Virus record (IMG/VR): IMGVR_UViG_3300018891_000001
Span: 62,001 to 126,000 of that record
Reading direction: 5' to 3' (one strand)
DNA: 64,000 nucleotides
Under the pieces are notes generated by a model. It made no database searches. It worked only from the letters and a program-made list of their open reading frames with translations, and had not been told where the DNA came from. Made by a program: the position numbers and the translations under genes. Below, in pieces: positions 21,698-61,368 of the stretch; position 1 is the first letter of the stretch, and each line of letters begins with the position of its first letter.

Positions 21698-21711
21698 TGT
21701 AATGCATGACA
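21698..21711 (+). promoter_or_regulatory. Copy of the recurrent palindromic motif (TGTAATGCATGACA), followed by an extended -10-like TGnTATTAT
   Basis: 13/14 match to TGTAATGCATTACA in the 21680-21803 intergenic gap. Confidence 0.55.
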
Positions 21712-21803
21712 TGTTATTATAAAGAAAGATGAACTGAGCGAAAAAAGGAGAAAGGGTCATATTATACTTCTTTGTATGACATAAATAAGGAGGAATCAGT
21801 AAT

Positions 21804-22382
21804 ATGGCCATTAACCGAATACGACTGAGTCAAATTAAGGCGCAAAGTCCGGATCTCAATCATTTTGAGGAGCAATTAAATGGACAAGGACAACCCTACT
21901 ATGAGAAAATCGTGGCTTCTGAAGGGCAGCAACGATTTACATTAGCGGTCCCATACCAAGCAGGAAATGGAGATTTATTGGTCTTTTTGAATGGACAGAA
22001 AGTGACAGCTACTTCAGATCCATCTCAAGCCGATGGGGAATATCGGGAAATCGATCCAACCACTATCGAATTTGTAAATCCTTTATTCCAAGATGATATT
22101 GTAGAGTTCTTTATGAGTGGAAAAGGCCAAGGGGTGGCTATGGTCGTAGACCACTTTCATGTGTATCGAGAAAAGCCAAGTGGAACGATTGATGGGATCA
22201 ATCGAGTCTTTTTTCTAGCACGCACTCCAAAGGTCAATTCGGAAATGGTGTTCCGAAATGGAATACTATTGAACATGGGAGTAGAAGAAGATTATGTCAT
22301 GGATGGCAATAAAATCATTTTTAATGAGGCTCCACCTATAGGTTCGAAAATTCTTGTTAATTATGATGTATCCTATGTCTAA
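21804..22382 (+). CDS. Virion protein with two tandem beta-rich repeats (F-x-L...V-x-x-NG)
   Basis: Two similar units (QRFTLAVP...LLVFLNGQ...EFVNPL...DIVEF and RVFFLARTP...EMVFRNGI...IFNEAP...KILVNY); strong RBS AAGGAGG. Confidence 0.6.
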   Translation: MAINRIRLSQIKAQSPDLNHFEEQLNGQGQPYYEKIVASEGQQRFTLAVPYQAGNGDLLVFLNGQKVTATSDPSQADGEYREIDPTTIEFVNPLFQDDIVEFFMSGKGQGVAMVVDHFHVYREKPSGTIDGINRVFFLARTPKVNSEMVFRNGILLNMGVEEDYVMDGNKIIFNEAPPIGSKILVNYDVSYV

Positions 22383-22397
22383 TAAGGAGGAATAGGC

Positions 22398-22976
22398 ATG
22401 TCAAATCCTACAAAAATCTTAATGTATGATTTAGAATCTTCTATTCGAAAACTTCTTGAAGATTTAAACACCTTTCAAGGAAGCTATTCGTCTTTATATG
22501 AGCGTTTAAACAAACTTGATGTCAGTGTGTTTGATGGAGATACCAAATCTGTAATCCAAGATTTGATTGATGCATATCGAAACGATAATAAAGGATTGAC
22601 TAGGGAACGGATAAACAGCTTGGAATCCCAATTAGCAAGTACCCAAGACGATGTGGTCATTCTTGAAAATAAATTAAACAGCACTGAGAAGCAGATCCTT
22701 TTAAGCTCCATTATCGAAACATCAAAGTACGAAGAATATCAATATGACTCTGGAGGCAATGTCATTCATCATCGTGTTTATGCAGACAATACCAAAGCCA
22801 AAAAGATATATGAAATCTCTTTCACGTATGATTCGCCAGAAAGTGGAGTATTGCAAAGTTCTCAAAAGAAAGTATACGAAGAAGATGGTGTTACCTTAAA
22901 ACAAACCGTAAATAAGGTATACAATTATGATTCTCAAACAGGGGATATTATCTCCATTGCAACTACAGTAGTGTAG
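22398..22976 (+). CDS. Hypothetical tail/fibre-region protein (coiled-coil N-terminus, Tyr/Asp-rich beta C-terminus)
   Basis: 192-aa ORF with RBS AAGGAGG. Confidence 0.65.
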   Translation: MSNPTKILMYDLESSIRKLLEDLNTFQGSYSSLYERLNKLDVSVFDGDTKSVIQDLIDAYRNDNKGLTRERINSLESQLASTQDDVVILENKLNSTEKQILLSSIIETSKYEEYQYDSGGNVIHHRVYADNTKAKKIYEISFTYDSPESGVLQSSQKKVYEEDGVTLKQTVNKVYNYDSQTGDIISIATTVV

Positions 22977-22994
22977 CGGGGGGAGGGGAGCTGT

Positions 22995-23714
22995 ATGGAT
23001 ATTGTTTCATTTTCTAAAGCCAGTAAAACACTCAAAAAGATTCAAGAACTTGATCAATCTGTAGTGTCTCCTTTAGCCGAAGACCGGTTTTCAACTGTCG
23101 ATGCACGGTTGGATTGGCTAGAGGGGCAAGCTAATAAGGCCATCACCGAAAATAGCAAACAGTTGGATTTAAGTCAAGGTGTATTTGATAATACCGAGTT
23201 TGTGAATGGAAAGTTGAAGTTGAAGGCAGTAAGACAAATAGAAACAATGGAGTCAAATGTGCAAATCCACTACTACCCTTCCGGCACTTATGAATCTCCG
23301 GTTATTGATTTAGGAGAGGAATGGAAAGAAACAAAATTAGTGGATATTATCAAGCAAATTAAAACAGGAACAACAGATTGTATTTTAGAAATATCCACTT
23401 CTTCAGATGGAGTCACATTTTCATCTTATTTGACACTCGATTTATCCTCTTTACCTCAAGGTCGATATATAAAAATACGTGCTACTTTATCGGCTCTAGT
23501 ACAACCGGGAGAAGTTAAAACCCTGCAATATAGTCAGTCTCCTGAAAATCACGTCACGTTAAATGAATTTACAGAAGCCAATGGGGATCTCAAATTAAAA
23601 AATCAATACACATATGCGATGAATATGGACGGAACACTGGGACAGGGAAATCAATTTAGTGTTTCCATTCCAAAAACATCTTTTAAATCGATTCAATCGA
23701 TAGAGGTGAAATAA
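22995..23714 (+). CDS. Fibre adapter-like protein, paralog family MD(I/V)xS
   Basis: Shares the N-terminus (MDIVSFSKA) and the NTExVNGK.../YxPSGxYESPVxDxGE motifs with the genes at 26033 and 29846. Confidence 0.6.
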   Translation: MDIVSFSKASKTLKKIQELDQSVVSPLAEDRFSTVDARLDWLEGQANKAITENSKQLDLSQGVFDNTEFVNGKLKLKAVRQIETMESNVQIHYYPSGTYESPVIDLGEEWKETKLVDIIKQIKTGTTDCILEISTSSDGVTFSSYLTLDLSSLPQGRYIKIRATLSALVQPGEVKTLQYSQSPENHVTLNEFTEANGDLKLKNQYTYAMNMDGTLGQGNQFSVSIPKTSFKSIQSIEVK

Positions 23715-23715
23715 C

Positions 23716-24639
23716 ATGCAGTCCACAATAAAATATTTAGTTGAAGATAATGGAGAAGTAAAGAAATTTAATGGAACCTCTTGGGTTTCAGTTGGTTCGA
23801 TGCCTGCCACGGAATCCATGTTCTTAACGGATGGCATGACTGATTTAAGTGTGATTGATAATGCTGCCATTCAAGCATTGGTGTCAGATACACCGAAACT
23901 ATTAATGTATCATGATAATCCATCTAAGACTTCAGCTTTGGCTACCTTAATAGCCGTACCACATGGACAGTTAATCCTTCAAGAAGGGGATATGGATGTA
24001 AGCGGAGGAGTGCAAAGTCTTTCTATTGCGGCAACCTCTACAGGTGTAAGTATGTTAAAAATAATCATTAGTACAGATAGCGGAGTGACATGGAAAACTT
24101 TTGACGGGAATGCATGGAGCGCCATTGTTCCAAATGCATCATCGGTAAAATCCAATGGCATGACACCATCTGTTATCAATGGTCTTACGAAAGACCAAAT
24201 TGATGTACTCTTAAATGGAAGTAACACTTTGCGATTTGCCTATTATTTAGAGCAAGATCAAATAGTCGATGTTGTAAATGTCGATTCTATTACGATTACA
24301 GCCAATCCTGTAGCAACAGAAACTCCATCCCTTGACAGTATTAAAATCACATATGACGAATTAACCATTGAAGGGCGCATGCAAGATCTAGAAAGAGTGA
24401 ATGCAATCAATATGCAAAAACTTCAATTTAAAGCAAATACCATTATGAAATCACATGCTTATAAACTTCATGATTTGGTAATAGACACATTTGAGGTAGA
24501 CAGTATGGAAACATTAGATTCGTCAATAAATGACACACAAATTAAAGACATGTCTACACCTGAGATACTGGGAAATGGATATATTTCAAAAGTAAGTCTA
24601 TCTGAGTTTAAGAGTATCAATGGAGTCACTCTTTCTTAG
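23716..24639 (+). CDS. Tail fibre-associated protein, paralogous to part of 28019-29833
   Basis: Shares WVSVG..PATE.MF..DGMTDLS.ID, IIIS.DSG.TWK and RFA(Y/F)YLEQ motifs with the 28019 product. Confidence 0.6.
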   Translation: MQSTIKYLVEDNGEVKKFNGTSWVSVGSMPATESMFLTDGMTDLSVIDNAAIQALVSDTPKLLMYHDNPSKTSALATLIAVPHGQLILQEGDMDVSGGVQSLSIAATSTGVSMLKIIISTDSGVTWKTFDGNAWSAIVPNASSVKSNGMTPSVINGLTKDQIDVLLNGSNTLRFAYYLEQDQIVDVVNVDSITITANPVATETPSLDSIKITYDELTIEGRMQDLERVNAINMQKLQFKANTIMKSHAYKLHDLVIDTFEVDSMETLDSSINDTQIKDMSTPEILGNGYISKVSLSEFKSINGVTLS

Positions 24640-24663
24640 TGACTCCTTCAAGGAGGGAAATAA

Positions 24664-25896
24664 ATGGGACAACCAATTAGAAATTTGCCAGTTGGATCAT
24701 GGGTAAAAGATACTGCTACTCTAATTAACGGGAAAATAGTTAAATGGAAAATTCTAGATCATAATCATTCTGGTTATCCAACCAATACCACTACTTTAAT
24801 GGGTGTTCCCGATCAAACTGATCCTGTCCTAGTGTCTCCACAACCATCTTGGAACAACAGTGCCAAAAGCACATTTCGTGATTTTTCTACTACTTATAAA
24901 GGGATGACCAAAACCATCGGTGAAATCCTGGATGAATTATACCAAGGATTCAGTCAAGGATTAAAAAATAAAATTGTGGATACGCCATTGGATATTGGTT
25001 ATTCAGGAAGCTATACAGGATCTAGTGCACGGACAAGAAAAGAAACTCATCGTATCTTTTTATTTGGTGCAAAAGAAATGAATCATGGAAGTTCTACTTA
25101 TTTAAATGGAGCCAATAGTCAAGTGTACTTTCCACAATTAAGTGCATTTAATAATTCTGGTATTAATATTTATATGAACATTGATTCTTCAATAAAAGTC
25201 ATGAGTCGTGATATCGCAATTAGTTCATCTGACTATTATACTATGTTTCCAGGATACCTAAATATTCAACAAGGATATAGCGCTAGTTCTACAATTCAAA
25301 TGCAGATTCTTCCAATGATTAATATATCATCTGATACAATGGTTAAAGACCAACAGGATGGTGATACTTATATTTTAGATCTTAGTCAACGTTTAGGTTT
25401 AATAGAAAAAGATGGAGAAATTCTTAAATGGGATGCAAGTATCTCTAATTGGGTGAGTGTGGGCAATAGTCCGGCAACAGAAGATATGTTTTTAAATCAT
25501 GGAATAGCTGATTTTTCTGTTATTCCAAAAGAAAAATGGAAGAAGCTAAATAATCAATTTGATATCCTTTGTTATAGTGATGTATCAGATTTGCAAAAAA
25601 TTATTATTAAAAAACCCAAAAGTGTGTATAATCCTACGGAGTTTTGTTATAAGGGATATGGTGTAATTGCAACAAAAACAGAAATCTTGCCAAAATCAAG
25701 AAGAAAATTGCTGATTAGTGCAGAGCATGCAAATTGTCTATTTGAATATTCCTTAGATGACGGTATAACATGGCATAGTTGCAATGTAGAAGAATTGATA
25801 GATGTTACAGCCATTTCTGGAAATCAATTAAAAATAAAAATTACTCTTCCTGATGTAACAGCAACTATTAGTTCATTATCATTTTCGTGGATATAA
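24664..25896 (+). CDS. Putative tail fibre / receptor-binding protein
   Basis: The N-terminus (IRNLPVGSWVKD...KWKILDHNHSGYP) resembles DUF6273-type prophage tail proteins. The C-terminal YSLDDGITW...SFSWI end is shared with neighbouring fibre genes. Confidence 0.5.
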   Translation: MGQPIRNLPVGSWVKDTATLINGKIVKWKILDHNHSGYPTNTTTLMGVPDQTDPVLVSPQPSWNNSAKSTFRDFSTTYKGMTKTIGEILDELYQGFSQGLKNKIVDTPLDIGYSGSYTGSSARTRKETHRIFLFGAKEMNHGSSTYLNGANSQVYFPQLSAFNNSGINIYMNIDSSIKVMSRDIAISSSDYYTMFPGYLNIQQGYSASSTIQMQILPMINISSDTMVKDQQDGDTYILDLSQRLGLIEKDGEILKWDASISNWVSVGNSPATEDMFLNHGIADFSVIPKEKWKKLNNQFDILCYSDVSDLQKIIIKKPKSVYNPTEFCYKGYGVIATKTEILPKSRRKLLISAEHANCLFEYSLDDGITWHSCNVEELIDVTAISGNQLKIKITLPDVTATISSLSFSWI

Positions 25897-26000
25897 ATAA
25901 CAGGAAATATGGGTATATAAATTGAGGTGAAGTTAAAAATTAAAGATTTTAACAGACAGAGAATAGTTTTCCTCTTATACTTCCCCTTATAATAAAATCA

Positions 26001-26014
26001 TGTAATGCTTTTCA
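26001..26014 (+). promoter_or_regulatory. Degenerate copy of the palindromic motif (TGTAATGCTTTTCA) 7 bp downstream of TATAAT
   Basis: 12/14 match; TATAAT at 25988-25993; RBS GAGGTG at 26021-26026 follows. Confidence 0.5.
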
Positions 26015-26032
26015 TGACAAGAGGTGAAATAC

Positions 26033-28015
26033 ATGGATGTTCTTTCGTTAGCAAAAGCCATGAAAGCAAAACGAAGCATTCAACAATTGCAACATCGATT
26101 AGGAATGAATGGAACCGAACAAGGAGAAGATGTGCGAGGCACTTATGCAAATGTCAAAAGCAGATTAGAAGAATTGGAAAAGAAAAATCCCAAAGTGACT
26201 TTGTATAATCGAGTCAGCGATTTGGAGCAGCATACAGTTATCAACTTAAACAAACACAATTTGCATATCAACTCGATTTTAAATCAATCCAAATTTAATT
26301 TAGCTGAATTGGCCTTTGATGATTTTGGTGACGATAGCGGCATTGATGCCTCAAAGTCAATCGGTCATGTATTTGATGCAGCCGGCCGCCGAGTAAAAAT
26401 TGCAAATGGACAAACGCAAGCAGAAATTGTCACTACTGCTGAAAATACAAATACGATCCCACAAATGATCACAGTTTCCCAATCCTTTAATGGACAGTTA
26501 ACATCAAACAAATTAGTGGATATGACTAATGGAACATTGATGAATACTGAAATCGTGAATGGGAAAATTCAACTAAAAACAATAGGCACTATAAAAGCAG
26601 GAATATATAAATCCAATGCCATACCAATTATGAATAGTAATATGAGTAAAGGAATTACAGTATCTGCTTCTTCTGAATATAGTGCAACTTATCAAGCCTG
26701 GAAAGCTTTTAATGGTACTACATTAGACAGCACTGATGCATGGATTACTGCCAATGGTCAAACAGTGGGATGGTTAAAACTTGATTTGGGTGCAGGAAAT
26801 GAAAAAGCGATTGCCAAATACACGATTACACCTAGAAATCATACGAGCTCACTAGATGCTTCTCCTAAAAACTGGACATTTGAAGCTTCTCATACAGGGG
26901 CTTTCGCTGGAGAGCAAATTATTTTGGATCAGCAAACCGATATCACGGGATGGTCAATAAACACTAAAAAAGAGTTTACTTTTACTAATACAATGCCTTA
27001 TCGTTATTATCGCATTCATATTACAGCAAACAATGGAAATGGATCTTATACAGCTATTGGTGAAATGGAATTAATGGAAGAAGATATTCAAAATCTCTAT
27101 GTGCCAAGTGGATCCTATGAATCTCCTGTATTAGATTTAGGAGAAAACTTCAAATCATTGAGAAAAATTGAGAAAAATGGATCTGTTTTAGTGGAATATG
27201 TAAGTCTAATTCCAGCCATGACATCCAACGATAACGGTAATATACAAATATCTGCTTCCACTCAATATAGTAGCACTTATGCACCATTTAAGGCTTTTGA
27301 TGGGATTATATCAGGAAGTGCAAATCGTTGGGTTACGGCTTACAACTATAGGACAGGATGGCTTCAAGTGCAATTTAAGTCAGGTGCGAAGGTTGTAAAA
27401 AAGTATTCGATTCGATGTATAGATGGTAGCAATATAGGTCAAGCACCTAAAGATTGGACCTTTGAGGGGTCACACGACAGAATAAATTGGACCATTTTAG
27501 ATCAACAAGCCAATCAAATCAATTGGTCGTCGGCTGAAAAAAGAGAATTTGAAATTAGCAATACAAATGCTTATCCATATTATCGCATCAATATTACTGC
27601 AAATAATGGAGAAACGGCCGTATCAATTACAGAAATGGAGTTGTTTGAGAAAATTGAATATGGAGATGTGAAAGTTTATACTGCCACGTCCTCTGATAAC
27701 CTCACGTTTTCTGACTGGCAATCTATTAATCCAGATGGAACGATTGCCTCTCCATCGGCTCGGTATATAAAAATAAAAGTGGAGCTAATCGGTGGTGCAG
27801 AAGTGCAAGAAAAAACAGTATATGATTTTACTTTAACGGATGCAGTTAATTTTGAGGCAAATAAGCAGATAGTGTTTGATGGTTCATTAAGACTGAAAGT
27901 AAACCATACTGAAAGCATGGATCTTGACCCCTCATTCTCAGAATCAGGAACATTATTAAGAAAAGTTATTAATAAGAATCAATTTAAAACAATCGAAAAG
28001 CTAGAGGTGAAATAA
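26033..28015 (+). CDS. Fibre adapter-like protein with two inserted discoidin (F5/8 type C-like) domains
   Basis: Two domains with SASSxYS...AxKAFxG...W...GWL...PKxWTFExS...YxYYRIxITANNG...IxEMEL (~26618-27082 and ~27203-27652). RBS GAGGTG favours ATG 26033. Confidence 0.75.
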   Translation: MDVLSLAKAMKAKRSIQQLQHRLGMNGTEQGEDVRGTYANVKSRLEELEKKNPKVTLYNRVSDLEQHTVINLNKHNLHINSILNQSKFNLAELAFDDFGDDSGIDASKSIGHVFDAAGRRVKIANGQTQAEIVTTAENTNTIPQMITVSQSFNGQLTSNKLVDMTNGTLMNTEIVNGKIQLKTIGTIKAGIYKSNAIPIMNSNMSKGITVSASSEYSATYQAWKAFNGTTLDSTDAWITANGQTVGWLKLDLGAGNEKAIAKYTITPRNHTSSLDASPKNWTFEASHTGAFAGEQIILDQQTDITGWSINTKKEFTFTNTMPYRYYRIHITANNGNGSYTAIGEMELMEEDIQNLYVPSGSYESPVLDLGENFKSLRKIEKNGSVLVEYVSLIPAMTSNDNGNIQISASTQYSSTYAPFKAFDGIISGSANRWVTAYNYRTGWLQVQFKSGAKVVKKYSIRCIDGSNIGQAPKDWTFEGSHDRINWTILDQQANQINWSSAEKREFEISNTNAYPYYRINITANNGETAVSITEMELFEKIEYGDVKVYTATSSDNLTFSDWQSINPDGTIASPSARYIKIKVELIGGAEVQEKTVYDFTLTDAVNFEANKQIVFDGSLRLKVNHTESMDLDPSFSESGTLLRKVINKNQFKTIEKLEVK

Positions 28016-28018
28016 GAA

Positions 28019-30884: not shown

Positions 30885-32510
30885 ATGATAGCACAACATA
30901 TTTTATTTATTAATAAGTATCAAGAGTTATGGGGGATGGGGCGAAACGCCAGTGGACAATTAGGGGATGGAACGACTACTAATAAACTTATCCCTACTCG
31001 AATTGGAACAGATACAGATTGGAAACAGGTAGCAGTAGGAGAGTTTCATACAGTTGCTATCAAAAATGATGGAAGTCTGTGGGCATGGGGGCATAACGCC
31101 AATGGACAAGTAGGGGATGGAACGACTACTAGTAGAACCACTCCTACTCGAATTGGAGCAGATACAGATTGGAAACAAGTAGCAGCAGGAAACCATCATA
31201 CAGTTGCTATTAAAAATGATGGAAGTCTGTGGGCATGGGGGTATAACGCCAATGGACAAGTAGGGGATGGAACGACTGCTAATAAAAACACCCCTACTCG
31301 AATTGGAACAGATACAGATTGGAAACAGGTAGCAGCAGGAAGCAATCATACAGTTGCTATCAAAAATAATGGAAGTCTGTGGGCATGGGGGCATAATAAC
31401 TATGGACAAGTAGGGGATGGAACGACTGCTAATAAAAACACCCCTACTCGAATTGGAGCAGATACAGATTGGAAACAAGTAGCAGCAGGAAACCATCATA
31501 CAGTTGCTATTAAAAATGATGGAAGTCTGTGGGCATGGGGGTATAACGCCCAAGGACAATTAGGGGATGGAACGATTACTAGTAGAACCACTCCTACTCG
31601 AATTGGAGCAGATACAGATTGGAAACAAGTAGAGGTAGGATACCAACATGCAGTTGCTATTAAAAATAATGGAAGTCTGTGGGCATGGGGGTATAACAAC
31701 GTTGGACAATTAGGGGATGGAACGACTGCTACTAGAACCACTCCTACTCGAATTGGAGCAGATACAGATTGGAAACAAGTGATAATAGCGGGATCTACCT
31801 CTTACGGAATCAAATTAACACTCGATTTATATGGTTGGGGGTATAACAACGTTGGACAATTAGGGGATGGAACGACTAACAATAGGCTAACTCCAATCAA
31901 AATTTCCATTACAGATCCTATCGGAGTGTCTATCCAAAAAATTTTCCCAACAAATGTTCCTACAAATTTGATTGTAGCTTGTCGTTCTCTTGATCTATAT
32001 AAGTTAATTTTAAAGGTTCAAATTCCTTCTCAAACCGGTATGAGATTTTTATTCTCAACCGATAAAACCAACTGGAAATCTTATAACTTGACTACACGTT
32101 CATGGGAAGTGGTTTCTCTTGAAAATATTCGTAATCAAGGAATGACCAAAGAACAAGTCGAGTCGTTAAATGAAATCGATCTAGCTCCATATCGCAATGT
32201 TCCATTTTATATTGCTGTATGTATGTGGACTGAAAATCAAAATGAAACTCCTGTATTTAGGGGAATCGATGGGTATATTGATGCCTATACTAATACTCCA
32301 AGTATTCAATCGATTTCTGCTGAATGTGAATTGCTAAAAAGCGAACAACCAAAACTCTATGTTTCTCGAGATGATGGAGCCACTTGGAAAGAAATCCGGC
32401 CAGATACTCTCACTCAATTAGATGACTTACCAGAAGGAACCAAATTACGTGTAAAAGCAGTTCTTTCAAATGGTCAAGAACTGCATGGACTGTCATATTC
32501 TTGGGTTTAA
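30885..32510 (+). CDS. RCC1-repeat (beta-propeller) putative receptor-binding fibre protein
   Basis: About 6.5 repeats of GQLGDGTT...[31 protein letters not shown]; C-terminal module almost identical to that of the 28019 product. Confidence 0.85.
30951..31895 (+). repeat. Tandem 150-bp coding repeat array (6 full units plus 1 partial)
   Basis: Units start at 30951, 31101, 31251, 31401, 31551, 31701 and 31851, with long identical blocks such as GATACAGATTGGAAACA and GGAAGTCTGTGGGCATGGGGG. Confidence 0.95.
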
Positions 32511-35260: not shown

Positions 35261-35285
35261 ATGTTATACTGTTGATATATAAATT

Positions 35286-35299
35286 GGTAATGCATTACA
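35286..35299 (+). promoter_or_regulatory. Copy of the palindromic motif (GGTAATGCATTACA) downstream of TGnTATACT
   Basis: Perfect 12-bp core GTAATGCATTAC at 35287-35298; extended -10-like TGTTATACT at 35262-35270. Confidence 0.6.
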
Positions 35300-35317: not shown

Positions 35318-36778
35318 ATGGCCTATGTCATTCAACATGAAGATATATGGATTGAAAGTACAGAGCCGTTAAGTTGGAGACAATTTTTCGATGAATCTTT
35401 AAATTACGAGAATCTATCTATTAATATTCAAGACTATGCAGATTATCAGCCAACTCGATTGCAGTTTCATTTGTCTTCTGTTGCAACGAATCAAAACATT
35501 CGGATACGGATTCCCTATGCCAATCGGTTAACACGAACTCATGCTAAACATGCAATGGTTTGTCGATATCACGAAACACAAAAACAATGGACGAAAGTGT
35601 CTCATATATTAAATGAAAAGGACAAAACCATCGAGTTTACCGTAAACAGCACGGGGATTTACTGTGTATTTGTAAATCATTATTGGTATACATCGTTTAC
35701 GCAACGAATGGCTCATGAGTATCCAAATTGGACATTGATTCGGCAATCTGCTCAAAGTATCGGTCAACAATTTTTAAACTATTTTGGAATAGAATTAGAA
35801 ACAGTTCAAGATTATTTAGAATGGATTTCGGAACAAAAGTACATTAGTACAGTTGATATCCATGTGTATGATTGGATTTATATGTATACATTACCGGATC
35901 TGCAAATGTCCGATCATATAGAAGTGTATCGAGTGCTTAGTGGAGGAACAACGATTCCTGTTATAGTGTTAGACACCATTAAAGAATTTTTCTATAATGA
36001 CCGAAATGAAGGCGGTATTTTTGATTACGAGGAAAAACGATTTTACACCTCTCGACGTTATGGTACACTTCGATTTGATATTATACGAAACGGAGTTCGT
36101 ATCTCATATACCGTTGAGCCTGTCGATTATCATGTGTGGAATGCGTTAGACGAATTTGGTCTTTTGGTAGGATTGCAGCGACTGCATTTAGAGAAAAATG
36201 CCACATTCAAAGAACGAATTCTTGATGTCTTTCGTTATCCATCTGGAACTCATGATATTGGATTGACACACGGAATTGCGAGAGATTTAAATTTAATTCA
36301 GCGAAAAGATCGATTCGGAAAACCTTTAATCTGGAAAGATGACACCAAAGATTTTTATTTAAAAAATGTCACAGGGAAGCGGATCGATGTTCGTACACTT
36401 CGTGTGGATCATCAGCCGCTTGAAGAACATGAATATGAAATTGATGAGATCGGAAATATTCGGATTTTTGCTACAGGAACAGGAGAATCACACGAAATCA
36501 GTTTTATTTATGGAATTGAAAAATATCAGCTGTATGATAAGGCTCATCCTTCTTTATATAAAATGATGTTTACCTCTGATGGGCAGGCGACTCCTACACT
36601 AATCAATTGGGTGGAATACATTAATACCATCGCTCCGGTGATGTGGGACCACTTCAACTGGGATGAAGGGTTTTGGGATACGATTGATCAACAATTAACC
36701 GGATTGGGGTATGTGCCAAATATTTGGGATTCCAATATTGATGTATGGAGAGAGTATGTATTTGAGTCTGAAAGATAG
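35318..36778 (+). CDS. Hypothetical virion structural protein
   Basis: 486-aa ORF. VWNALDEFGLLVGLQRLHLEKNATFKERIL resembles baseplate wedge 'G...R...E.D..YR.RI' segments. Confidence 0.6.
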   Translation: MAYVIQHEDIWIESTEPLSWRQFFDESLNYENLSINIQDYADYQPTRLQFHLSSVATNQNIRIRIPYANRLTRTHAKHAMVCRYHETQKQWTKVSHILNEKDKTIEFTVNSTGIYCVFVNHYWYTSFTQRMAHEYPNWTLIRQSAQSIGQQFLNYFGIELETVQDYLEWISEQKYISTVDIHVYDWIYMYTLPDLQMSDHIEVYRVLSGGTTIPVIVLDTIKEFFYNDRNEGGIFDYEEKRFYTSRRYGTLRFDIIRNGVRISYTVEPVDYHVWNALDEFGLLVGLQRLHLEKNATFKERILDVFRYPSGTHDIGLTHGIARDLNLIQRKDRFGKPLIWKDDTKDFYLKNVTGKRIDVRTLRVDHQPLEEHEYEIDEIGNIRIFATGTGESHEISFIYGIEKYQLYDKAHPSLYKMMFTSDGQATPTLINWVEYINTIAPVMWDHFNWDEGFWDTIDQQLTGLGYVPNIWDSNIDVWREYVFESER

Positions 36779-46814: not shown

Positions 46815-46828
46815 TGTAATGCATTTCA
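46815..46828 (+). promoter_or_regulatory. Copy of the palindromic motif (TGTAATGCATTTCA), followed by an extended -10-like TGnTAAAAT
   Basis: 13/14 match in the short gap between 46807 and the GAGGAGG RBS at 46844-46850. Confidence 0.55.
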
Positions 46829-46857
46829 TGATAAAATAAACCAGAGGAGGAATGTTT

Positions 46858-47916
46858 ATGCCTGTTTATTCGACACGGGATTTGATTCCTTTTGTTAACC
46901 AGCTAGAGCAAAAAATTTTGGAAATGAATGAAGCATTTAAAGATTGGGATCTTAATAAATACCGAGTCCTGCAATCTGTTAACCGAATAGATGCTACCTT
47001 CACTACAGCAATGACGGCTTTAGTACGTGCTGACGAGGCGTTAGCAGAGATTGGGACAGCCACTTTCCGAAGCGCAGCTAGCCGTGGTAAACGCTTAGAA
47101 GATACATTAAACAAACTGAAAAACGAAATCTATGAAATTGCTGCTACCGTTCCTGCAAACGGTGGCGGCGCTTTAACCGAAGGAATTTTTTATGATGAAC
47201 TCAATAATGCCATTGCTTCTGTTGATGCCACGATTGAGGATGGATTAAAACTGGATTATCGATTAAGAGAAATCCAGGAAATGGCGGCTTATGGAAATGT
47301 GGCGATACAAAAAGAACTGTATATGCCTTATAAATACAGTGTGACAAATCCATCCTCTTTAACAATTGAGATTCCTTCACAAGATGAGATCGTTTTTGTG
47401 GACGGGGAAGTAACGGTATTAAATCAAGAAGGAACCCCTTTTTTAGATGAGAATCAACAACTGATTACAGGAACGATTAACACAAATGGAATAGTTACGT
47501 TAACAGCGATTCCTTCAGATATGTGTTATTTATATTTTCCGGTTCAAATGAAATTTAAAGACATTCCAAAAGAATTTCTGTATTTATTTATGCAGCAAAT
47601 GATTCAGAAAAACAGTCGTATTATGGAATTTATATTGACTTTTGAAAAGCAACTTCTTGATATTTTACAAGATATCGATTATATGAAAGGAACTCAATGG
47701 ACTCCCGATTTTTCAATTATGAGAAATCATCAGGAGATTGTAAAAGAAGGTATTACTCCAAAAGGACTGAATGTAGAAGTCGTCGATGGAAAGGCTCATG
47801 TGACATTTAGCTATAATGACCATCCTCATTTAAGTCATTTCATACTAGAAATATGGGATGAAGCTCAACAGCGGTTTGTTCCTTATGATGGGGTTAACGG
47901 TATTGTTCAGAAATAA
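46858..47916 (+). CDS. Hypothetical virion protein with coiled-coil N-terminus
   Basis: ORF of ~352 aa; RBS spacing favours ATG 46858 over 46852. Confidence 0.65.
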   Translation: MPVYSTRDLIPFVNQLEQKILEMNEAFKDWDLNKYRVLQSVNRIDATFTTAMTALVRADEALAEIGTATFRSAASRGKRLEDTLNKLKNEIYEIAATVPANGGGALTEGIFYDELNNAIASVDATIEDGLKLDYRLREIQEMAAYGNVAIQKELYMPYKYSVTNPSSLTIEIPSQDEIVFVDGEVTVLNQEGTPFLDENQQLITGTINTNGIVTLTAIPSDMCYLYFPVQMKFKDIPKEFLYLFMQQMIQKNSRIMEFILTFEKQLLDILQDIDYMKGTQWTPDFSIMRNHQEIVKEGITPKGLNVEVVDGKAHVTFSYNDHPHLSHFILEIWDEAQQRFVPYDGVNGIVQK

Positions 47917-56170: not shown

Positions 56171-56184
56171 AAAGGAGCTTCTTT

Positions 56185-58299: not shown

Positions 58300-58307
58300 G
58301 TGAATAC

Positions 58308-59612
58308 ATGTTAAACATTACGAATGTTACATTTTATTTTGCCAATCCAAAGCAAGATGCCAATGGAAATCCCTTAATGAATCAACCTCCAGAATCTCAT
58401 ACTCTTTCATGGGAAGAAGTCGCCAATAATGCAGGTTTTTCTTTATCAACAGGTGAATCGATGTTTACAGAATTGCCAGAGCCTAACAATAAGCATGTCA
58501 TTCGAATCATTAACGGATTTTATTTTGGTACGGGCTTATGCGGGAGTCTACTGGCCATTCAATATCATTATGAAGACGGCTCAGAAGGTTGGATTGCGTC
58601 TATACGATCTCAATCTTCACACGCTCAACATTTAAACACAATTATCGGCAACTGGATAAAGGGGCTGACCTATGAGCAAATTACACAGCATCCAAACTGG
58701 AGTGGAAAGCCCTATATTGGGCATGAAAATGATTTTGTAGAAGTCGAGGTAGTACGAATTACCCCTTCTCCAGAACCAGAGCCGGATCCTGATCCTAACC
58801 CAGAACCGGAGCCAGAACCTTGTGATTTATTGCTAACACCATTGTCATTAACCATTCCTTTAGGAAGTGCAGCTACATTTGAAGTGACCCATTCTTTCAC
58901 TGAGTCCGGACAATGGATATATGATCTGACTCTACTAGTCATAGAGAAAAACAGTCAACGCCTTGTTGTCCAGCCTCAAGCATTAGGCTCTTATTCAATT
59001 CAATACACTGTAAAACATTGCAATGCCTCGGCACTTTTAACGGTAATAGAACCGGATTCGAATCCAGGAAATGAAACAGACCCTGTAGAGCCGCCTCCAC
59101 CGCCATTGCCAAATACGCCACCTGATCCTATTGAAACATCGGATTGGGTGATTAAACTGGTGGATGCGTCCAAACCGATTCCACCTCTTTATAAACTTCC
59201 GAATATCATGAAGAGGAATGCCCGGTATCGGGGACATCGTGAATCTGAAAAATTTCTCAGCGACCACCAAGAACAAATCTATGAAATCCGACAAATCTAT
59301 AAAGATTTATCATCTCTTGAGCAAATGAAAGACGTTACAGTCCGTTCTTGGTTTTACGGCGTAGAAACCGGGAGTATTTCTATGAAATTAGAAGAAAATG
59401 ACAAGGAAACGAAAAAAAGACAGGAAGACTTTACCGACAAGGGCATTGACAGTATAAGAGCTTTTACTAACGATGTGATACAATTAAGTGGGAACTCTTT
59501 TGAAGAACGTATTGTAGGTATCTATGGATTAAGACAAAAAATGCGGGAATTAGATGAAAGAATTGCAGAAGCCGAAAGGAGATACAGGGAATATGAGAAT
59601 GCCTACAAGTAA
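58308..59612 (+). CDS. Virion protein with Pro/Glu-rich linkers and an Ig-like middle domain
   Basis: PSPEPEPDPDPNPEPEPEP and PVEPPPPPLPNTPPDP linkers. C-terminal ARYRGHRESEK resembles ARFRGPTSSHEY of the next gene. Confidence 0.65.
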   Translation: MLNITNVTFYFANPKQDANGNPLMNQPPESHTLSWEEVANNAGFSLSTGESMFTELPEPNNKHVIRIINGFYFGTGLCGSLLAIQYHYEDGSEGWIASIRSQSSHAQHLNTIIGNWIKGLTYEQITQHPNWSGKPYIGHENDFVEVEVVRITPSPEPEPDPDPNPEPEPEPCDLLLTPLSLTIPLGSAATFEVTHSFTESGQWIYDLTLLVIEKNSQRLVVQPQALGSYSIQYTVKHCNASALLTVIEPDSNPGNETDPVEPPPPPLPNTPPDPIETSDWVIKLVDASKPIPPLYKLPNIMKRNARYRGHRESEKFLSDHQEQIYEIRQIYKDLSSLEQMKDVTVRSWFYGVETGSISMKLEENDKETKKRQEDFTDKGIDSIRAFTNDVIQLSGNSFEERIVGIYGLRQKMRELDERIAEAERRYREYENAYK

Positions 59613-60843
59613 AGGTGGTGGGGCACGATTTCGTGGTCCCACTTCTTCGCATGAATATAACATGAATGAAGATCAAAAATATCTGGAACTTATAGAATTG
59701 TATCAACAAGCTAATGCTACACAACTCAATCTAAAAGAGGCACATCAAATTGTACTTATTGAAAATGCTGCTTTACATGATTACGTTAAAATGTTAGAAG
59801 ACCGAGTAGCACATCTAGAATCTCAACTCGACTCTTTAGGAGGAGCTTCTTGGATGAACGGTCATTTTTTTAAAACATCCTTTGTACAAGATATGACAAC
59901 CCGATATCCAAAAGATTTTCAAGATCAGCAAGTATCTATTCCTCGATGCCAAGTTGATTTGCAGCATCGTTACGTAACTATTCCTCAAATCCATCAGATA
60001 CCAAAAACACATATCGTGGATGATAAAGGAAATCACATTATCCCCTCGCAGCTAAAAATCAAAGTAGGACGAAGCAACACTAAAGGAACGGTTTCTGAAA
60101 ATGATATTCTAAATGCTTTTAATGGGGATCCTTTATCATTCTGGCGAAGAAGTGTTACATACGATTCTTTATCTGATGTTCCTAAAGATGGCGAAGATGT
60201 CATAATCGAAATCGAACTCCCAAGCCATCTTGTAAATAATTTAAATGTCAATACAATCGTGATACATCCACATCCAGAACGAGGAATCCAGATTAAGAAT
60301 ATTGAAATCCATTACAATAATGGGTGGCAAACAATCAAGGGATTTAAGCAAGAGGACATTACAAGTGTTCGTGGTGATGACCATTCGCCAAGAAGAAAGT
60401 GGTACTTTCCAAGCGTTCCAGTTCAGAAGGTGCGAATCACATTGATTCAAAAGCATCCGGTGAACATTGGGGGTAAAACTGTATTCATTTTAGGAGCCCA
60501 GGAAATAGGAATTTATTTATCAATGTTTGAGCCGAGTGGAGGAATGATTCTCACTCCATTTGAGATGGATGGTATCTACAATATTGAATCTGTAGAACAT
60601 GTATTTTTAAACCGAAAAGCGTTGAGTTATCCAGAGAATATGGACTACATGTTAAATGGAAATATCTTTGAATATGAATTATACGCAGAGGAACCTGATC
60701 TTACTTTGCGTCCGATTACTCGTTCTGAATGGACAAGTCAAACAGCTCGACGCATATGGGTAAAAACACATTTATATCCAGATCCTCACAATGGAGTAAA
60801 TCCTTGCCTTCATGCCGTGCGATTACACTACACCAAGGAATAA
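59593..60843 (+). CDS. Virion structural protein, same paralog family
   Basis: GARFRGPTSSHEYN and NAFNGDPLSFWRR motifs. ATG 59593 (or 59599) overlaps the upstream gene end; the track start 59554 lacks an obvious RBS. Confidence 0.65.
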   Translation: MRMPTSKGGGARFRGPTSSHEYNMNEDQKYLELIELYQQANATQLNLKEAHQIVLIENAALHDYVKMLEDRVAHLESQLDSLGGASWMNGHFFKTSFVQDMTTRYPKDFQDQQVSIPRCQVDLQHRYVTIPQIHQIPKTHIVDDKGNHIIPSQLKIKVGRSNTKGTVSENDILNAFNGDPLSFWRRSVTYDSLSDVPKDGEDVIIEIELPSHLVNNLNVNTIVIHPHPERGIQIKNIEIHYNNGWQTIKGFKQEDITSVRGDDHSPRRKWYFPSVPVQKVRITLIQKHPVNIGGKTVFILGAQEIGIYLSMFEPSGGMILTPFEMDGIYNIESVEHVFLNRKALSYPENMDYMLNGNIFEYELYAEEPDLTLRPITRSEWTSQTARRIWVKTHLYPDPHNGVNPCLHAVRLHYTKE

Positions 60844-60861
60844 TGTAAGGAGGCAAGCAAT

Positions 60862-61251
60862 ATGGCAAACTTTTATCAAAAAGAAATTGATATCGACTCC
60901 CTTATTCGTCGTCAAGATGAACTAGAACGTGAGATTAGTAAACTCAAAGAAATGTACAAAGACATGAAAGAACATAATGACCAATCGATCGGGCGAATCA
61001 ACCAGCGAATTGATGAATTAGAAGAAGAAGTCGCTGAAGTTCGTCAAACACTAAATGAATTAAAAGTATCACTTGATGTGATTCAAACAGGAGTCAATAC
61101 CGTACAACAACATGTCAGCGATATTAATGCCAAACAAGATGTGGCCATCACCGCTCAAGATAAATTTATTGAGCAACTGTGGAAAGCATTCTTTGCTTTA
61201 CTTGGTGTCATTACTGCCGCAGGAGCAGGTATCGTAACATTACTAAAGTAA
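60862..61251 (+). CDS. Coiled-coil protein with a C-terminal transmembrane segment (holin/XhlA-like candidate)
   Basis: Heptad-rich body, then LWKAFFALLGVITAAGAGIVTLLK; last gene of the structural block; RBS AAGGAGG. Confidence 0.5.
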   Translation: MANFYQKEIDIDSLIRRQDELEREISKLKEMYKDMKEHNDQSIGRINQRIDELEEEVAEVRQTLNELKVSLDVIQTGVNTVQQHVSDINAKQDVAITAQDKFIEQLWKAFFALLGVITAAGAGIVTLLK

Positions 61252-61260
61252 AAAATTAAG

Positions 61261-61306
61261 AAAAATGCAGAATTCTTGCGTAAATACAAGAAATTCTGCA
61301 TTTTTT
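61261..61306 (+). terminator. Rho-independent terminator (possibly bidirectional) ending the structural block
   Basis: AAAAATGCAGAATTCTTG / CAAG(A)AATTCTGCATTTTTT inverted repeat with an 8-nt loop. Confidence 0.85.
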
Positions 61307-61318
61307 CATTGACAATAC

Positions 61319-61352
61319 TTGTGCATAGAAATATATCATGTTAGAATATAAT
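61319..61352 (+). promoter_or_regulatory. SigmaA-type promoter for the recombination/replication genes
   Basis: TTGTGC (61319-61324), 17-bp spacer, TGnTAGAAT (61339-61347). TTGACA at 61309-61314 and TATAAT at 61347-61352 suggest overlapping alternative promoters. Confidence 0.65.
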
Positions 61353-61368
61353 TGTAATGCATTACAAT
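61351..61368. promoter_or_regulatory. Perfect 18-bp palindrome ATTGTAATGCATTACAAT (candidate operator)
   Basis: Perfect inverted repeat over the predicted +1 region; an extra half-site CATTACAA lies at 61376-61383. Confidence 0.7.

What the first reader, a model, noticed from the sequence alone, without database searches (positions are those of the whole stretch)
21698..61368. A 14-bp palindrome TGTAATGCATTACA marks five intergenic promoter regions
Seen: copies at 21698 (TGTAATGCATGACA), 26001 (TGTAATGCTTTTCA), 35286 (GGTAATGCATTACA), 46815 (TGTAATGCATTTCA) and 61353 (perfect, extending to 18 bp). All five are in rare intergenic gaps next to -10-like hexamers. Two lie just upstream of TGn(-10) and three lie downstream of a -10; four are followed by TG. 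It differs from the CcpA cre consensus (central CG) by having central GC. Inference: the operator of a phage-encoded dimeric regulator co-ordinating structural sub-operons and the replication operon. A more speculative alternative is a recognition element for a phage sigma factor or the phage RNAP.
Basis: partly seen in the sequence, partly recalled or inferred. Interest (0 to 1): 0.6.

Follow-up and report, generated by a model that had tools for sequence, protein, structure and literature searches.

The report
Jumbo-phage operator palindrome at many promoters
A 14-base palindrome sits on about 25 promoters of a 216-kb soil Bacillales phage and its relatives but is almost absent from host chromosomes, so it is most likely the binding site of a phage-encoded dimeric regulator that controls most of the phage's structural, replication and nucleotide-metabolism operons.

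Summary
The window holds 7 matches with up to 2 mismatches (0.37 expected) and the 215,870-bp phage genome holds 31 (1.7 expected). Of those 31, 24 lie in the 8% of the genome that is non-coding.

The motif overlaps host-type extended -10 promoters (TGnTATAAT, no -35) at variable offsets, upstream of ribosome-binding sites. It is conserved at orthologous promoters in relatives whose proteins are only 27-66% identical and whose GC ranges from 29 to 53%. In three bacterial genomes that carry such an element, 32 of 35 near-perfect copies lie on the element contig, so it is not a host regulon.

It is palindromic, not fixed in spacing, too weak to be an RNA hairpin, and present in an element without the phage RNA polymerase. 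This fits an operator, not a sigma or polymerase promoter.

The best candidate binder lies outside the window: a 172-aa winged-helix plus coiled-coil protein. It has a modelled homodimer and an invariant recognition helix. Two motif copies sit in its own strong sigma-A promoter region, and this is conserved in most relatives examined. A neighbouring MerR-like protein is the main rival. Binding and the sign of regulation are inferred, not shown. No description was found in the literature searched.

The parts
21698..21711 (.). Motif copy TGTAATGCATGACA (1 mismatch), abutting an extended -10-like TGTTATTAT at 21712-21720. It lies 93 nt upstream of the 192-aa gene at 21804-22382.
26001..26014 (.). 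Motif copy TGTAATGCTTTTCA (2 mismatches), 7 nt downstream of TATAAT (25988-25993), so it spans the expected start site. It lies upstream of the 663-aa F5/8 type C domain structural gene (26024-28015). The orthologous gene in the Oceanobacillus element has a 2-mismatch copy 32 nt upstream.
35286..35299 (.). Motif copy GGTAATGCATTACA (1 mismatch), 15 nt downstream of TGTTATACT (35262-35270) and 19 nt upstream of the 486-aa gene (35318-36778). Orthologous genes carry a perfect copy 14 nt upstream (Oceanobacillus element) and a 1-mismatch copy 11 nt upstream (Alicyclobacillus element).
46815..46828 (.). Motif copy TGTAATGCATTTCA (1 mismatch), abutting the extended -10 TGATAAAAT (46829-46837), so it occupies the spacer and -35 zone. 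It lies upstream of the 354-aa gene (46852-47916). The same arrangement occurs at the orthologous promoters: TGTAATGCATTTCAtgttaaaat in the Oceanobacillus element and TGTAATGCTTTTCAtgatagaat in the Alicyclobacillus element.
61351..61368 (.). Perfect 14-bp motif (61353-61366) inside an 18-bp palindrome, directly after TGTTAGAAT/TATAAT (61339-61352). It lies 50 nt upstream of the Rad52-like 407-aa gene (61416-62639). Orthologous genes have 1-mismatch copies 29 nt and 67 nt upstream.
12826..12839 (.). It lies inside the 3' end of the 2304-aa ORF (6191-13105), preceded by TGATAAAC (12817-12824), 272 nt before the 2147-aa tail/baseplate lysin gene (13111-19554). It is a candidate internal promoter with operator. 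The Oceanobacillus orthologue has a 1-mismatch copy 261 nt upstream of the same gene.
60303..60316 (.). Copy TGAAATCCATTACA with 2 mismatches, inside the 429-aa ORF (59554-60843). Its function is doubtful. A similar sequence occurs at what looks like the matching place in coding DNA of the Oceanobacillus element, so protein-coding constraint may explain it.

Best explanation
TGTAATGCATTACA is the operator of a DNA-binding protein encoded by the phage itself, bound as a symmetric dimer.

About 25 copies per genome overlap the core of host-type sigma-A promoters of the extended -10 class (TGnTATAAT, no -35). A copy lies either 0-8 nt downstream of the -10, across the start site, or abutting the -10 from upstream, in the spacer and -35 zone. 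Occupancy should therefore exclude or trap host RNA polymerase, so the site most likely acts negatively.

This places the structural, DNA-replication/recombination and nucleotide-metabolism operons under one switch. The small-gene arms, presumably early, are left out.

The most likely binder is the 172-aa winged-helix plus parallel coiled-coil protein at genome 203729-204247, minus strand (L014:8732-9247). Its gene has the only two strong -35/-10 sigma-A promoters found in the phage's intergenic DNA, followed by two operator copies, which looks like early expression with negative autoregulation.

Shown here: the sites, their enrichment, their positions, their conservation, their restriction to the element, and the domains of the candidate protein with its modelled dimer.

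Inferred: that this protein (rather than a neighbour) binds, that binding represses, and the biological purpose. The purpose could be temporal gating of middle and late genes, or silencing in a carrier or dormant state.
For: 1. Enrichment. There are 31 sites with up to 2 mismatches against 1.7 expected. 24 of 31 lie in the 8.3% of the genome that is non-coding, P = 2e-20. GCATTACA is the most intergenic-enriched 8-mer, ahead of the Shine-Dalgarno words.

2. Promoter overlap. In three genomes, 26 of 60 oriented sites have a -10-like hexamer ending 0-9 nt upstream, against 9% of control intergenic positions (odds ratio 7.4, P = 1e-11). The spacing is spread over 0-8 nt. A further 14 have the -10 just downstream. 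Of the associated boxes, 11 of 26 carry TGn against 5.8% background (odds ratio 12, P = 9e-8), and -35 elements are not enriched.

3. Symmetry. Both halves are near-invariant at G2, A4, A5, T6, G7 / T10, T11, C13. Mismatches are 9 against 19 between the halves, which is not significant.

4. Conservation at orthologous promoters. This holds in the 195-kb Oceanobacillus profundus and 198-kb Alicyclobacillus shizuokensis elements, whose proteins are 27-66% identical and whose GC is 35% and 52%.

5. Element specificity. Of the copies with up to 1 mismatch, 10 of 11, 13 of 15 and 9 of 9 in three whole bacterial genomes lie on the one element contig. Four more IMG/VR records carry 18-33 copies against 0-2 for the control pattern.

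6. Candidate protein.
- HTH_24 hit at 31.4 bits, above the 21.9 cut-off.
- AlphaFold2 model with a winged helix (1-80), a 60-residue helix (86-146) and a small beta domain, pLDDT 82.
- Homodimer model score 0.40 against best control 0.00. That mark was reached by 21 of 30 solved homo-pairs and 0 of 23 solved single chains. The runs agree in at least 71% of contacts, partner pLDDT is at least 74, and the coiled coil is in register and parallel.
- Recognition helix S-E-A-T-V-H-R-A invariant or near-invariant in 24 homologues that are 49-72% identical overall.
- Two operator copies in its upstream gap are islands of conservation in most relatives examined.
- The only two strong TTGACA-17-TATATT promoters in intergenic DNA drive this gene.
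Against: - No binding or expression data exist. The source is a biocrust metagenome and no RNA run holds the sequence.
- Four other conserved helix-turn-helix proteins co-occur with the motif in every complete relative: the MerR-like 93-aa protein next door, an ECF-like sigma, an ArsR-like 354-aa protein and the 215-aa protein with two helix-turn-helix motifs.
- The MerR-like protein has a weak TnrA-like hit, and the TnrA box shares the half-sites TGTNA/TNACA (the box is from my own knowledge).
- Phage 0305phi8-36 has a distant homologue of the winged-helix protein with a nearly identical recognition helix (SNATVHRA), yet it has no motif enrichment and no MerR homologue was found with this query.
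- One repressor over both replication and structural genes is unusual for a purely lytic programme. No integrase, ParA or TubZ was found to support a prophage or plasmid state.
Confidence: 0.6

Rival explanations
1. It is an operator with the same logic, but the binder is the conserved 93-aa MerR/TnrA-like protein (genome 204661-204942, minus strand; L014:9664-9942), not the winged-helix coiled-coil protein.
For: - The gene pair MerR-like then winged-helix is conserved in every relative.
- Its helix-turn-helix and wing are near-invariant.
- It has a weak hit to the TnrA equivalog NF053740 (E = 3.5e-5), and TnrA/GlnR boxes are TGTNA-N7-TNACA (own knowledge).
- Its operon starts with a conserved double site (209652/209679).
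- 0305phi8-36 lacks both the motif and a detectable MerR homologue, but keeps a winged-helix homologue.
Against: - The C-terminal helix that MerR-family proteins use to dimerise is absent or truncated in several relatives that keep the palindrome. The open frame is 61 aa in G005, and the protein ends just after the wing in L029 and is short in L028 and L030.
- The half-site spacing is N4, not the N7 typical of TnrA, GlnR and HspR (own knowledge).
- The sites are not in 19-20 bp spacers between a -35 and a -10, as in classic MerR activation.
Confidence: 0.2
2. The motif is a promoter element read by the phage's own transcription machinery: the ECF-like sigma (genome 139857-140627) or the YonO/QDE-1-like single-chain RNA polymerase (genome 14188-17667).
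For: - Both proteins exist.
- The motif sits 10-90 nt upstream of start codons at the heads of operons.
- It is phage-specific.
- The sigma co-occurs with the motif in all relatives tested.
- The promoter of YonO-type polymerases is still undefined (PMC5467207).
- A phage-specific motif was proposed as the polymerase target in 0305phi8-36 (PMC2147016).
Against: - A perfect palindrome carries no direction.
- The distance to the nearest -10 and to the start codon varies, and the motif lies on either side of the -10.
- It is tightly associated with host-type TGnTATAAT boxes, which a self-sufficient phage promoter would not need.
- The B. thuringiensis plasmid p1 has 10 near-perfect copies, but no YonO-like polymerase was found there by family or by protein query.
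Confidence: 0.07
3. The motif acts positively or after initiation. It could be an activator site for -35-less promoters. Or its TGTAAT half, a -10-like hexamer in the initially transcribed region, could pause sigma-bound polymerase so that a phage factor can load, in the manner of Q-type antitermination.
For: - The promoters lack a -35.
- In most sites the motif begins within 0-8 nt of the -10, inside the initially transcribed region.
- TGTAAT differs from TATAAT at one base (sequence).
- One switch that turns on the middle and late classes together would fit a lytic programme better than one repressor over both.
Against: - In a conserved subset (portal promoter, window 46815, window 21698) the motif lies upstream of the -10 and would not be transcribed from it.
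- Extended -10 promoters generally work without an activator (own knowledge).
- G at the second position of a -10 hexamer is strongly disfavoured for sigma recognition (own knowledge).
Confidence: 0.08
4. The motif is a binding site for a host regulator, such as a CcpA/LacI-type or other global factor, that the phage exploits.
For: The motif resembles the cre consensus TGWAANCGNTNWCA except at the centre (sequence; own knowledge).
Against: - Host chromosomes of 3.6-5.4 Mb contain 0-2 near-perfect copies, while the resident 145-198 kb element carries 9-13.
- The central dinucleotide is GC, not CG.
- The motif is the same in elements from hosts as different as Bacillus, Oceanobacillus and Alicyclobacillus.
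Confidence: 0.02
5. The motif works as RNA, as a hairpin at the 5' end of the mRNAs that stabilises them or binds a translational regulator.
For: Many copies fall in the predicted 5' untranslated region.
Against: - The predicted hairpin is worth only -0.5 kcal/mol.
- The central four bases, which would form the loop, are as conserved and as palindromic as the stem.
- Variants are mostly not compensatory.
- A conserved subset lies upstream of the -10.
Confidence: 0.02

Closest known systems
Dispersed operators of the phage P1 C1 repressor, and the stoperators of mycobacteriophage L5 repressor gp71 (recalled from my own knowledge, not tested here)
   Same: There are one to three dozen copies of one short site across a phage genome, at or near promoters of many operons. 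They are bound by one phage-encoded regulator whose own gene is also controlled.
   Different: - P1 and L5 sites are asymmetric and bound by monomers. L5 sites depend on orientation and act on elongation.
- Here the site is a 14-bp palindrome on extended -10 promoters.
- P1 and L5 are proven temperate phages. Here no integrase or partition gene was found.
- The candidate protein family is unrelated to C1 or gp71.
CcpA cre and LacI-family operators (TGWAANCGNTNWCA)
   Same: Both are 14-bp palindromes with TGTAA/TTACA-type arms that overlap promoters.
   Different: The centre is GC, not CG. The sites are confined to the phage element and missing from host chromosomes. No LacI-type protein was seen among the candidates.
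TnrA/GlnR box of Bacillus (TGTNA-N7-TNACA), bound by small MerR-family proteins
   Same: The half-sites are identical. A small MerR-family protein with a weak TnrA-like hit is encoded beside the candidate regulator.
   Different: The spacer is 4 bp instead of 7 bp. The phage protein lacks a dimerisation helix in several relatives. The sites are phage-specific.
The 21-bp phage-specific promoter candidates of Bacillus phage 0305phi8-36 (Hardies et al. 2007, PMC2147016)
   Same: This is the same broad phage lineage, with a YonO-like polymerase and about 30% identity in the tail lysin. It also has a phage-specific motif in many promoter-sized gaps that is absent from the host.
   Different: 0305phi8-36 shows no enrichment of TGTAATGCATTACA: 1 site against 3 for the control pattern. 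Its most enriched intergenic element is a hairpin with the conserved loop cgTGCGAACg. That may be the published motif, but I could not confirm it because the logo is not in the text.
Phage phi29 transcriptional regulator p4 (own knowledge)
   Same: It is a phage-encoded dimeric regulator acting on host sigma-A promoters of a Bacillus phage, some of which lack a -35, to switch temporal classes.
   Different: p4 binds upstream inverted repeats at a handful of promoters and both activates and represses. Here there are about 25 sites on the core promoter or start site, and the protein fold is different.

Membership tests
CcpA cre / LacI-family operator | Central CG step in the 14-bp palindrome | tested here: not met
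   Position 7 is G in 26 of 26 oriented sites and position 8 is C in 21 of 26, so the centre is GC.
CcpA cre / LacI-family operator | Sites form a host chromosomal regulon | tested here: not met
   Only 1 of 11, 2 of 15 and 0 of 9 near-perfect copies lie outside the element contig in three whole genomes.
Promoter element of a sigma factor or phage RNA polymerase | Fixed position relative to the start site and other promoter elements | tested here: not met
   The spacer to the upstream -10 is spread over 0-8 nt and more, and 14 sites have the -10 downstream instead.
Promoter element of a sigma factor or phage RNA polymerase | Asymmetric, directional sequence | tested here: not met
   The consensus is a full 14-bp palindrome, and the difference in conservation between halves is not significant.
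Promoter element of a sigma factor or phage RNA polymerase | Co-occurrence with the polymerase that reads it | tested here: inconclusive
   No YonO-like polymerase was found in G001, whose plasmid has 10 copies. The ECF-like sigma is present in every relative tested.
Dispersed operator network of an element-encoded regulator (P1 C1 / L5 gp71 type) | Many copies, confined to the element, concentrated in promoter-bearing gaps | tested here: met
Dispersed operator network of an element-encoded regulator (P1 C1 / L5 gp71 type) | The regulator gene itself carries the site (autoregulation) | tested here: met
   Two copies lie between the strong promoters and the start codon of the winged-helix gene, conserved in most relatives examined. 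This holds only if that protein is the binder.
Dispersed operator network of an element-encoded regulator (P1 C1 / L5 gp71 type) | Demonstrated protein-DNA binding and repression or immunity | not testable with these tools
   No protein-DNA modelling or expression data were available, and no RNA run holds the phage.
MerR-family operator | Palindrome inside an over-long (19-20 bp) spacer between a -35 and a -10 | tested here: not met
   Most sites are downstream of the -10, and -35 elements are not enriched.
TnrA/GlnR box | TGTNA-N7-TNACA, 17 bp | tested here: not met
   The half-sites match but the spacer is 4 bp in every copy.
Structured RNA element (5' hairpin) | Stable stem with compensatory variation | tested here: not met
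   Predicted energy is -0.5 kcal/mol, and the variants break pairing.
Winged helix-turn-helix regulators (Pfam HTH_24, PF13412), for the candidate binder | Score above the Pfam gathering cut-off and a winged-helix fold | tested here: met
   31.4 bits against the 21.9 cut-off and 32.2 bits in the genome scan. The model shows a three-helix bundle with a beta wing. Foldseek finds only generic winged-helix matches such as CodY and MarR, with E of 2e-3 or weaker.

The most novel reading that the evidence does not exclude
The palindrome and the winged-helix coiled-coil protein form a master silencing switch shared by a whole family of 145-230 kb Bacillales jumbo phages and at least one large plasmid. 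One early-made dimer would sit on nearly every host-type promoter of the replication, nucleotide and virion modules and hold the genome quiet in a carrier, spore-trapped or episomal state.

Observations that point this way:
- Relatives turn up as whole contigs in isolate assemblies.
- Two relatives are classed as proviruses by IMG/VR.
- One relative is filed as a complete plasmid.
- Repeats resembling Spo0A boxes sit upstream of the regulator's promoters.

If so, expression of the silenced modules would presumably follow release of the switch, or pass to the phage's own sigma or YonO-like polymerase.
Probability: 0.2. Interest if true: 0.75.

Novelty: new member of a known kind. Interest (0 to 1): 0.5.

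Why it matters
Transcriptional control in the 0305phi8-36 lineage of Gram-positive jumbo phages is essentially unknown, and so are the promoters used alongside YonO-type single-chain RNA polymerases.

This motif gives a concrete and testable handle:
- a defined 14-bp site;
- about 25 target promoters per genome;
- a short list of candidate binders;
- culturable hosts that already carry relatives, namely Oceanobacillus profundus DSM 18246, Alicyclobacillus shizuokensis NBRC 103103, and Bacillus subtilis-group and B. velezensis isolates.

It also marks the family well. The motif is conserved from 29% to 53% GC and is nearly absent from host chromosomes, so it can flag such elements in assemblies. 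If the regulator is a global repressor, it would explain how such large phages persist in isolates. It would also provide a compact, orthogonal repressor-operator pair for Bacillus.

Tried and rejected
- Nucleotide search of GenBank phages found nothing.
- Known relatives by protein (0305phi8-36, vB_BceM_WH1, KLEB27-3, Moorella MTATph1) do not share the motif. WH1 has 6 sites against 1 for the control pattern, which I did not follow up.
- The close-relative search for the regulator in IMG/VR found nothing.
- One protein look-up failed.
- I spent one protein search on an RCC1-repeat tail protein. It returned thousands of unrelated repeat proteins, plus one useful hit in Parageobacillus.
- No RNA run holds the phage, so read laying was not used and no transcript start could be mapped.
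- ATGCAT is not depleted or enriched overall (116 observed against 101 expected), so a link to restriction or methylation was dropped.
- The profile search of solved structures and Foldseek gave only generic winged-helix matches.
- HTH_3/XRE-type repressors are absent from the genome.
- No integrase, ParA (AAA_31), tubulin/TubZ or multisubunit polymerase beta domain was found with the families tried. Divergent versions could have been missed.
- Pfam and PHROGs gave no polymerase domain in the window's large ORFs, which look structural.
- Literature searches for the motif returned only unrelated primers.
- The large representative-protein search was not used.

Full report
**Observation**

A search for TGTAATGCATTACA with up to two mismatches finds seven copies in the window. 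Shuffles expect 0.37 (largest 2). The copy at 61353 extends to the 18-bp palindrome at 61351-61368.

All genes in the window are on the + strand, and the five copies lie in gaps between ORFs. Each is next to a -10-like box:
- TGTTATTAT and TGATAAAAT directly follow the copies at 21698 and 46815.
- TATAAT, TGTTATACT and TGTTAGAAT/TATAAT precede those at 26001, 35286 and 61353.

**Context**

The window is bases 62001-126000 of a 215,870-bp virus record with terminal repeats, 37% GC and strong AGGAGG ribosome-binding sites. The record comes from biocrust metagenomes, and no RNA run holds it.

The 2147-aa protein at window 13111-19554 is about 30% identical to the baseplate/tail lysin of the Bacillus phage 0305phi8-36 group and Moorella phage MTATph1. 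The window's large ORFs show only structural-type domains or none.

Like 0305phi8-36, the phage encodes a YonO/QDE-1-like single-chain RNA polymerase (PF05183, 35.7 bits; genome 14188-17667; PMC2147016). It also encodes an ECF-like sigma.

**Genome-wide picture**

- The genome holds 31 copies with up to two mismatches. Second-order Markov simulations expect 1.7, and the reversed pattern gives none.
- Of these, 24 lie in the 8.3% of the genome that is non-coding (P = 2e-20). Several of the "coding" ones are in fact just upstream of a better start codon, for example the dUTPase gene.
- GCATTACA is the most intergenic-enriched 8-mer, ahead of the Shine-Dalgarno words.
- The genes that follow the sites include a portal-like protein, virion and tail proteins, a Rad52-like protein, the ribonucleotide reductase large subunit, dUTPase, a DnaN-type clamp, a Cas4-like nuclease, a subtilase, a radical SAM protein, a DHH phosphoesterase and two LAGLIDADG endonucleases.
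- The roughly 26 kb of small minus-strand genes that wrap around the genome ends have almost none.

**Position relative to promoters**

I pooled three genomes and oriented the sites by the downstream gene. Of 60 sites, 26 have a -10-like hexamer ending 0-9 nt upstream, against 9% of control intergenic positions (odds ratio 7.4, P = 1e-11). The spacing is spread evenly over 0-8 nt. Another 14 have the -10 starting 0-20 nt downstream.

Of the associated -10 boxes, 11 of 26 carry the TGn extension against a 5.8% background (odds ratio 12, P = 9e-8). A -35 is not significantly enriched.

So the motif overlaps host-type extended -10 promoters. It lies either across the expected start site or in the spacer and -35 zone. 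Which arrangement is used is conserved at orthologous promoters, as at the portal gene and window 46815.

The consensus is symmetric, and the half-to-half difference in mismatches (9 against 19) is not significant. As RNA it would fold with only -0.5 kcal/mol. ATGCAT is not unusual in frequency.

**Relatives**

The known phages of the 0305phi8-36 group do not share the motif. Homologues of a phage regulator (described below) led to closer kin:
- contigs of 140-225 kb from Bacillus subtilis-group, B. velezensis and Priestia isolates and from metagenomes;
- a 145-kb Bacillus thuringiensis record filed as complete plasmid p1;
- a 195-kb contig of Oceanobacillus profundus DSM 18246;
- a 198-kb contig of Alicyclobacillus shizuokensis NBRC 103103.

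Whole-genome scans of the last three bacteria are the key control. Copies with up to one mismatch lie on the element contig in 10 of 11, 13 of 15 and 9 of 9 cases, and the 3.6-5.4 Mb of host DNA has next to none. This rules out a host regulon.

The Oceanobacillus and Alicyclobacillus contigs carry portal homologues (52-58% identical). They have 43 and 22 copies respectively.

Among the motif-bearing genes that have a reciprocal best hit, a motif copy lies upstream of the orthologue in 8 of 11 cases in the Oceanobacillus element. In the Alicyclobacillus element the figure is 7 of 13 at up to two mismatches, or 8 of 13 counting one three-mismatch copy. These include the orthologues of the window sites at 26001, 35286, 46815 and 61353, although the proteins are only 27-66% identical.

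An exact-match scan of IMG/VR found further large records. Four of them carry 18-33 copies against 0-2 for the control pattern, and IMG/VR classes two of them as proviruses.

**Who binds it**

The genome has no XRE-type repressor. Its helix-turn-helix proteins are:
- a 172-aa winged-helix protein;
- the 93-aa MerR-like protein encoded just upstream of it;
- the ECF-like sigma;
- an ArsR-like 354-aa protein;
- a 215-aa protein with two helix-turn-helix motifs;
- an HTH_36 protein.

The 172-aa protein stands out for several reasons.
- Its upstream gap contains the only two strong TTGACA-17-TATATT promoters in the phage's intergenic DNA. These are followed by two motif copies, a distal TGTAATGCATTATG and a proximal one just after a -10.
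- That layout is an island of conservation in most relatives examined. It holds even in the 53%-GC Alicyclobacillus element.
- Its recognition helix (SEATVHRA) is invariant or nearly so in 24 homologues of 49-72% identity.
- The AlphaFold2 model (pLDDT 82) shows a winged helix, a 60-residue helix and a small beta domain.
- The homodimer test passed. The score was 0.40 against a best control of 0.00. That mark was reached by 21 of 30 solved homo-pairs and 0 of 23 solved single chains. The runs agree in at least 71% of contacts, partner pLDDT is at least 74, and the contacts are in register along residues 100-146. This supports a dimer but does not prove one.
- No specific solved relative was found.

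The MerR-like neighbour is a real rival. It is equally conserved and has a weak TnrA-like hit, and TnrA boxes share the half-sites TGTNA/TNACA (my own knowledge). Also, 0305phi8-36 has no motif and no detectable MerR homologue, yet keeps a distant winged-helix homologue with helix SNATVHRA.

Against the MerR-like protein: its dimerisation helix is missing or truncated in several relatives that keep the palindrome. The spacer is N4, not N7. The sites are not in MerR-type over-long spacers.

**Sigma or polymerase promoter?**

The phage's YonO-like polymerase makes this worth weighing, and the promoter of such enzymes is still undefined (PMC5467207). But the motif is a palindrome, it is not fixed in position, and it is coupled to host-type -10 boxes.

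It also persists in the B. thuringiensis plasmid, where no such polymerase was found by family or by protein query. The polymerase is present in the other complete relatives tested. The sigma co-occurs everywhere, so co-occurrence cannot exclude it. The symmetry and variable spacing argue against it.

**Mechanism and purpose**

The best-supported reading is this. The phage makes a dimeric regulator early, from strong host-type promoters. That regulator occupies about 25 operators on the core of extended -10 promoters. It thereby blocks host polymerase at the replication, nucleotide-metabolism and virion operons, and it limits its own synthesis.

Everything beyond site position, conservation and protein architecture is inference.

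What the switch is for is open. It could gate the middle and late genes in time, or silence the genome in a carried state. Four observations point to a carried state:
- whole-contig relatives in isolate assemblies;
- the plasmid record;
- the provirus calls;
- a syntenic tail module inside a 1.77-Mb Parageobacillus contig.

Against a carried state, I found no integrase, ParA or TubZ.

**Novelty**

Neither the motif nor the regulator is described in the literature I could search. The kind of system, one phage regulator with dispersed operators, is known from P1 and L5 (my own knowledge). I therefore file it as a new member of a known kind, with a moderately interesting family-wide reach.

Noticed in passing
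L005:14191-17667 (genome 14188-17667, minus strand; outside the window): A 1159-aa ORF matches the RdRP/QDE-1 family PF05183 (35.7 bits, above the cut-off). It is a YonO-like single-chain RNA polymerase like orf99 of 0305phi8-36. Homologues 33-36% identical are in four relatives tested with this protein (G002, G004, G005, G006). A family hit and a reciprocal best hit show one in the Alicyclobacillus element too. None was found in the B. thuringiensis plasmid.
   Followed up: partly
L010:4857-5624 (genome 139857-140627, + strand): A 256-aa ECF-like sigma factor (TIGR02937, 39.8 bits, just under the 42.9 cut-off; Sigma70_r4), conserved at 38-54% identity in all six relatives tested (G001-G006). 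In the genomes I looked at, a motif copy follows the gene.
   Followed up: partly
L014:9248-9660 (genome 204248-204660, minus strand): The regulatory gap of the winged-helix gene holds a duplicated module. Repeats that look like Spo0A boxes (TGTCGAA, GTCGAAAT) sit just upstream of each of two TTGACA-17-TATATT promoters. Similar TGTCGA(A) pairs occur in relatives L019, L021, L024 and L025. This suggests a link to host sporulation control, as in phi29-type phages (the phi29 comparison is from my own knowledge).
   Followed up: partly
L005:4537, L005:9143, L013:12492, L014:17489, L014:17957 and others (genome 4537, 9143, 169111, 181140, 192492, 196453, 208057, 212489, 212957): A second recurring element, CCCCTCCGGGG-NN-TTTGGTGAAA, has about nine copies. 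All are in the minus-strand transcription sense, 15-40 nt before the ribosome-binding sites of small genes. It is also seen in relative L019. Its function is unknown. It could be a terminator, a processing site, or the target of the phage polymerase.
   Followed up: no
L182-L184 (0305phi8-36, record 164702-211782): The most intergenic-enriched words in 0305phi8-36 belong to about 15 hairpins with variable, compensating stems and a conserved loop, cgTGCGAACg, preceded by TACAAAA. This may be the published 21-bp phage-specific promoter candidate (PMC2147016). The logo is not in the text, so I could not confirm it.
   Followed up: partly
window 30885-32510; L027:10001-11641: The 541-aa RCC1-repeat virion-region protein is 71% identical over its full length to a protein of Parageobacillus galactosidasius. 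That protein lies inside a 1.77-Mb contig, flanked by syntenic tail-module genes and an IS605 insertion. A degenerate motif copy (GTAATGTGTTAC after TGTTATAAT) lies upstream of that insertion, ahead of the 487-aa gene that matches the window's 486-aa gene in size and order. This may be an integrated or mis-assembled relative.
   Followed up: partly
L010:8779-9717 and L012:8967-9776: Two LAGLIDADG homing-endonuclease genes each carry their own motif copy upstream, so mobile genes appear wired into the same regulon.
   Followed up: no
L014:14620-14651 (genome about 209620-209651, minus strand): Downstream of the variant site TGTAATGCCTTGCA lies a conserved inverted repeat, CCCCAAG-TTTTATGATAAA-CTTGGGG, that encloses a -10-like TGATAAACT. 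The site plus the repeat recur in L019, L021, L023, L025, L029 and L030.
   Followed up: no
L028 (B. thuringiensis lyx16 plasmid p1, 145,187 bp; G001:C2): A record filed as a complete plasmid (29% GC) shares the MerR-like/winged-helix pair, the ArsR-like protein, the ECF-like sigma and 10 near-perfect motif copies. No portal or YonO-like polymerase was found there with my queries. The regulatory module therefore seems to exist outside recognisable jumbo phages.
   Followed up: partly
genome 20391, 23892, 166217, 177912, 194553 (L006, L011, L012, L013): A TTTCCCYA element lies about 9 nt upstream of some -10 boxes (for example TTTTCCCTAACTTTTATGATATAAT). It is a possible alternative upstream promoter element, perhaps for the phage sigma.
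   Followed up: no
window 3387-4289: A 300-aa HNH-type endonuclease (phrog_4645, E = 8e-44) sits between large structural genes. It is preceded by a 232-bp gap with TGATATAAT but no motif.
   Followed up: no
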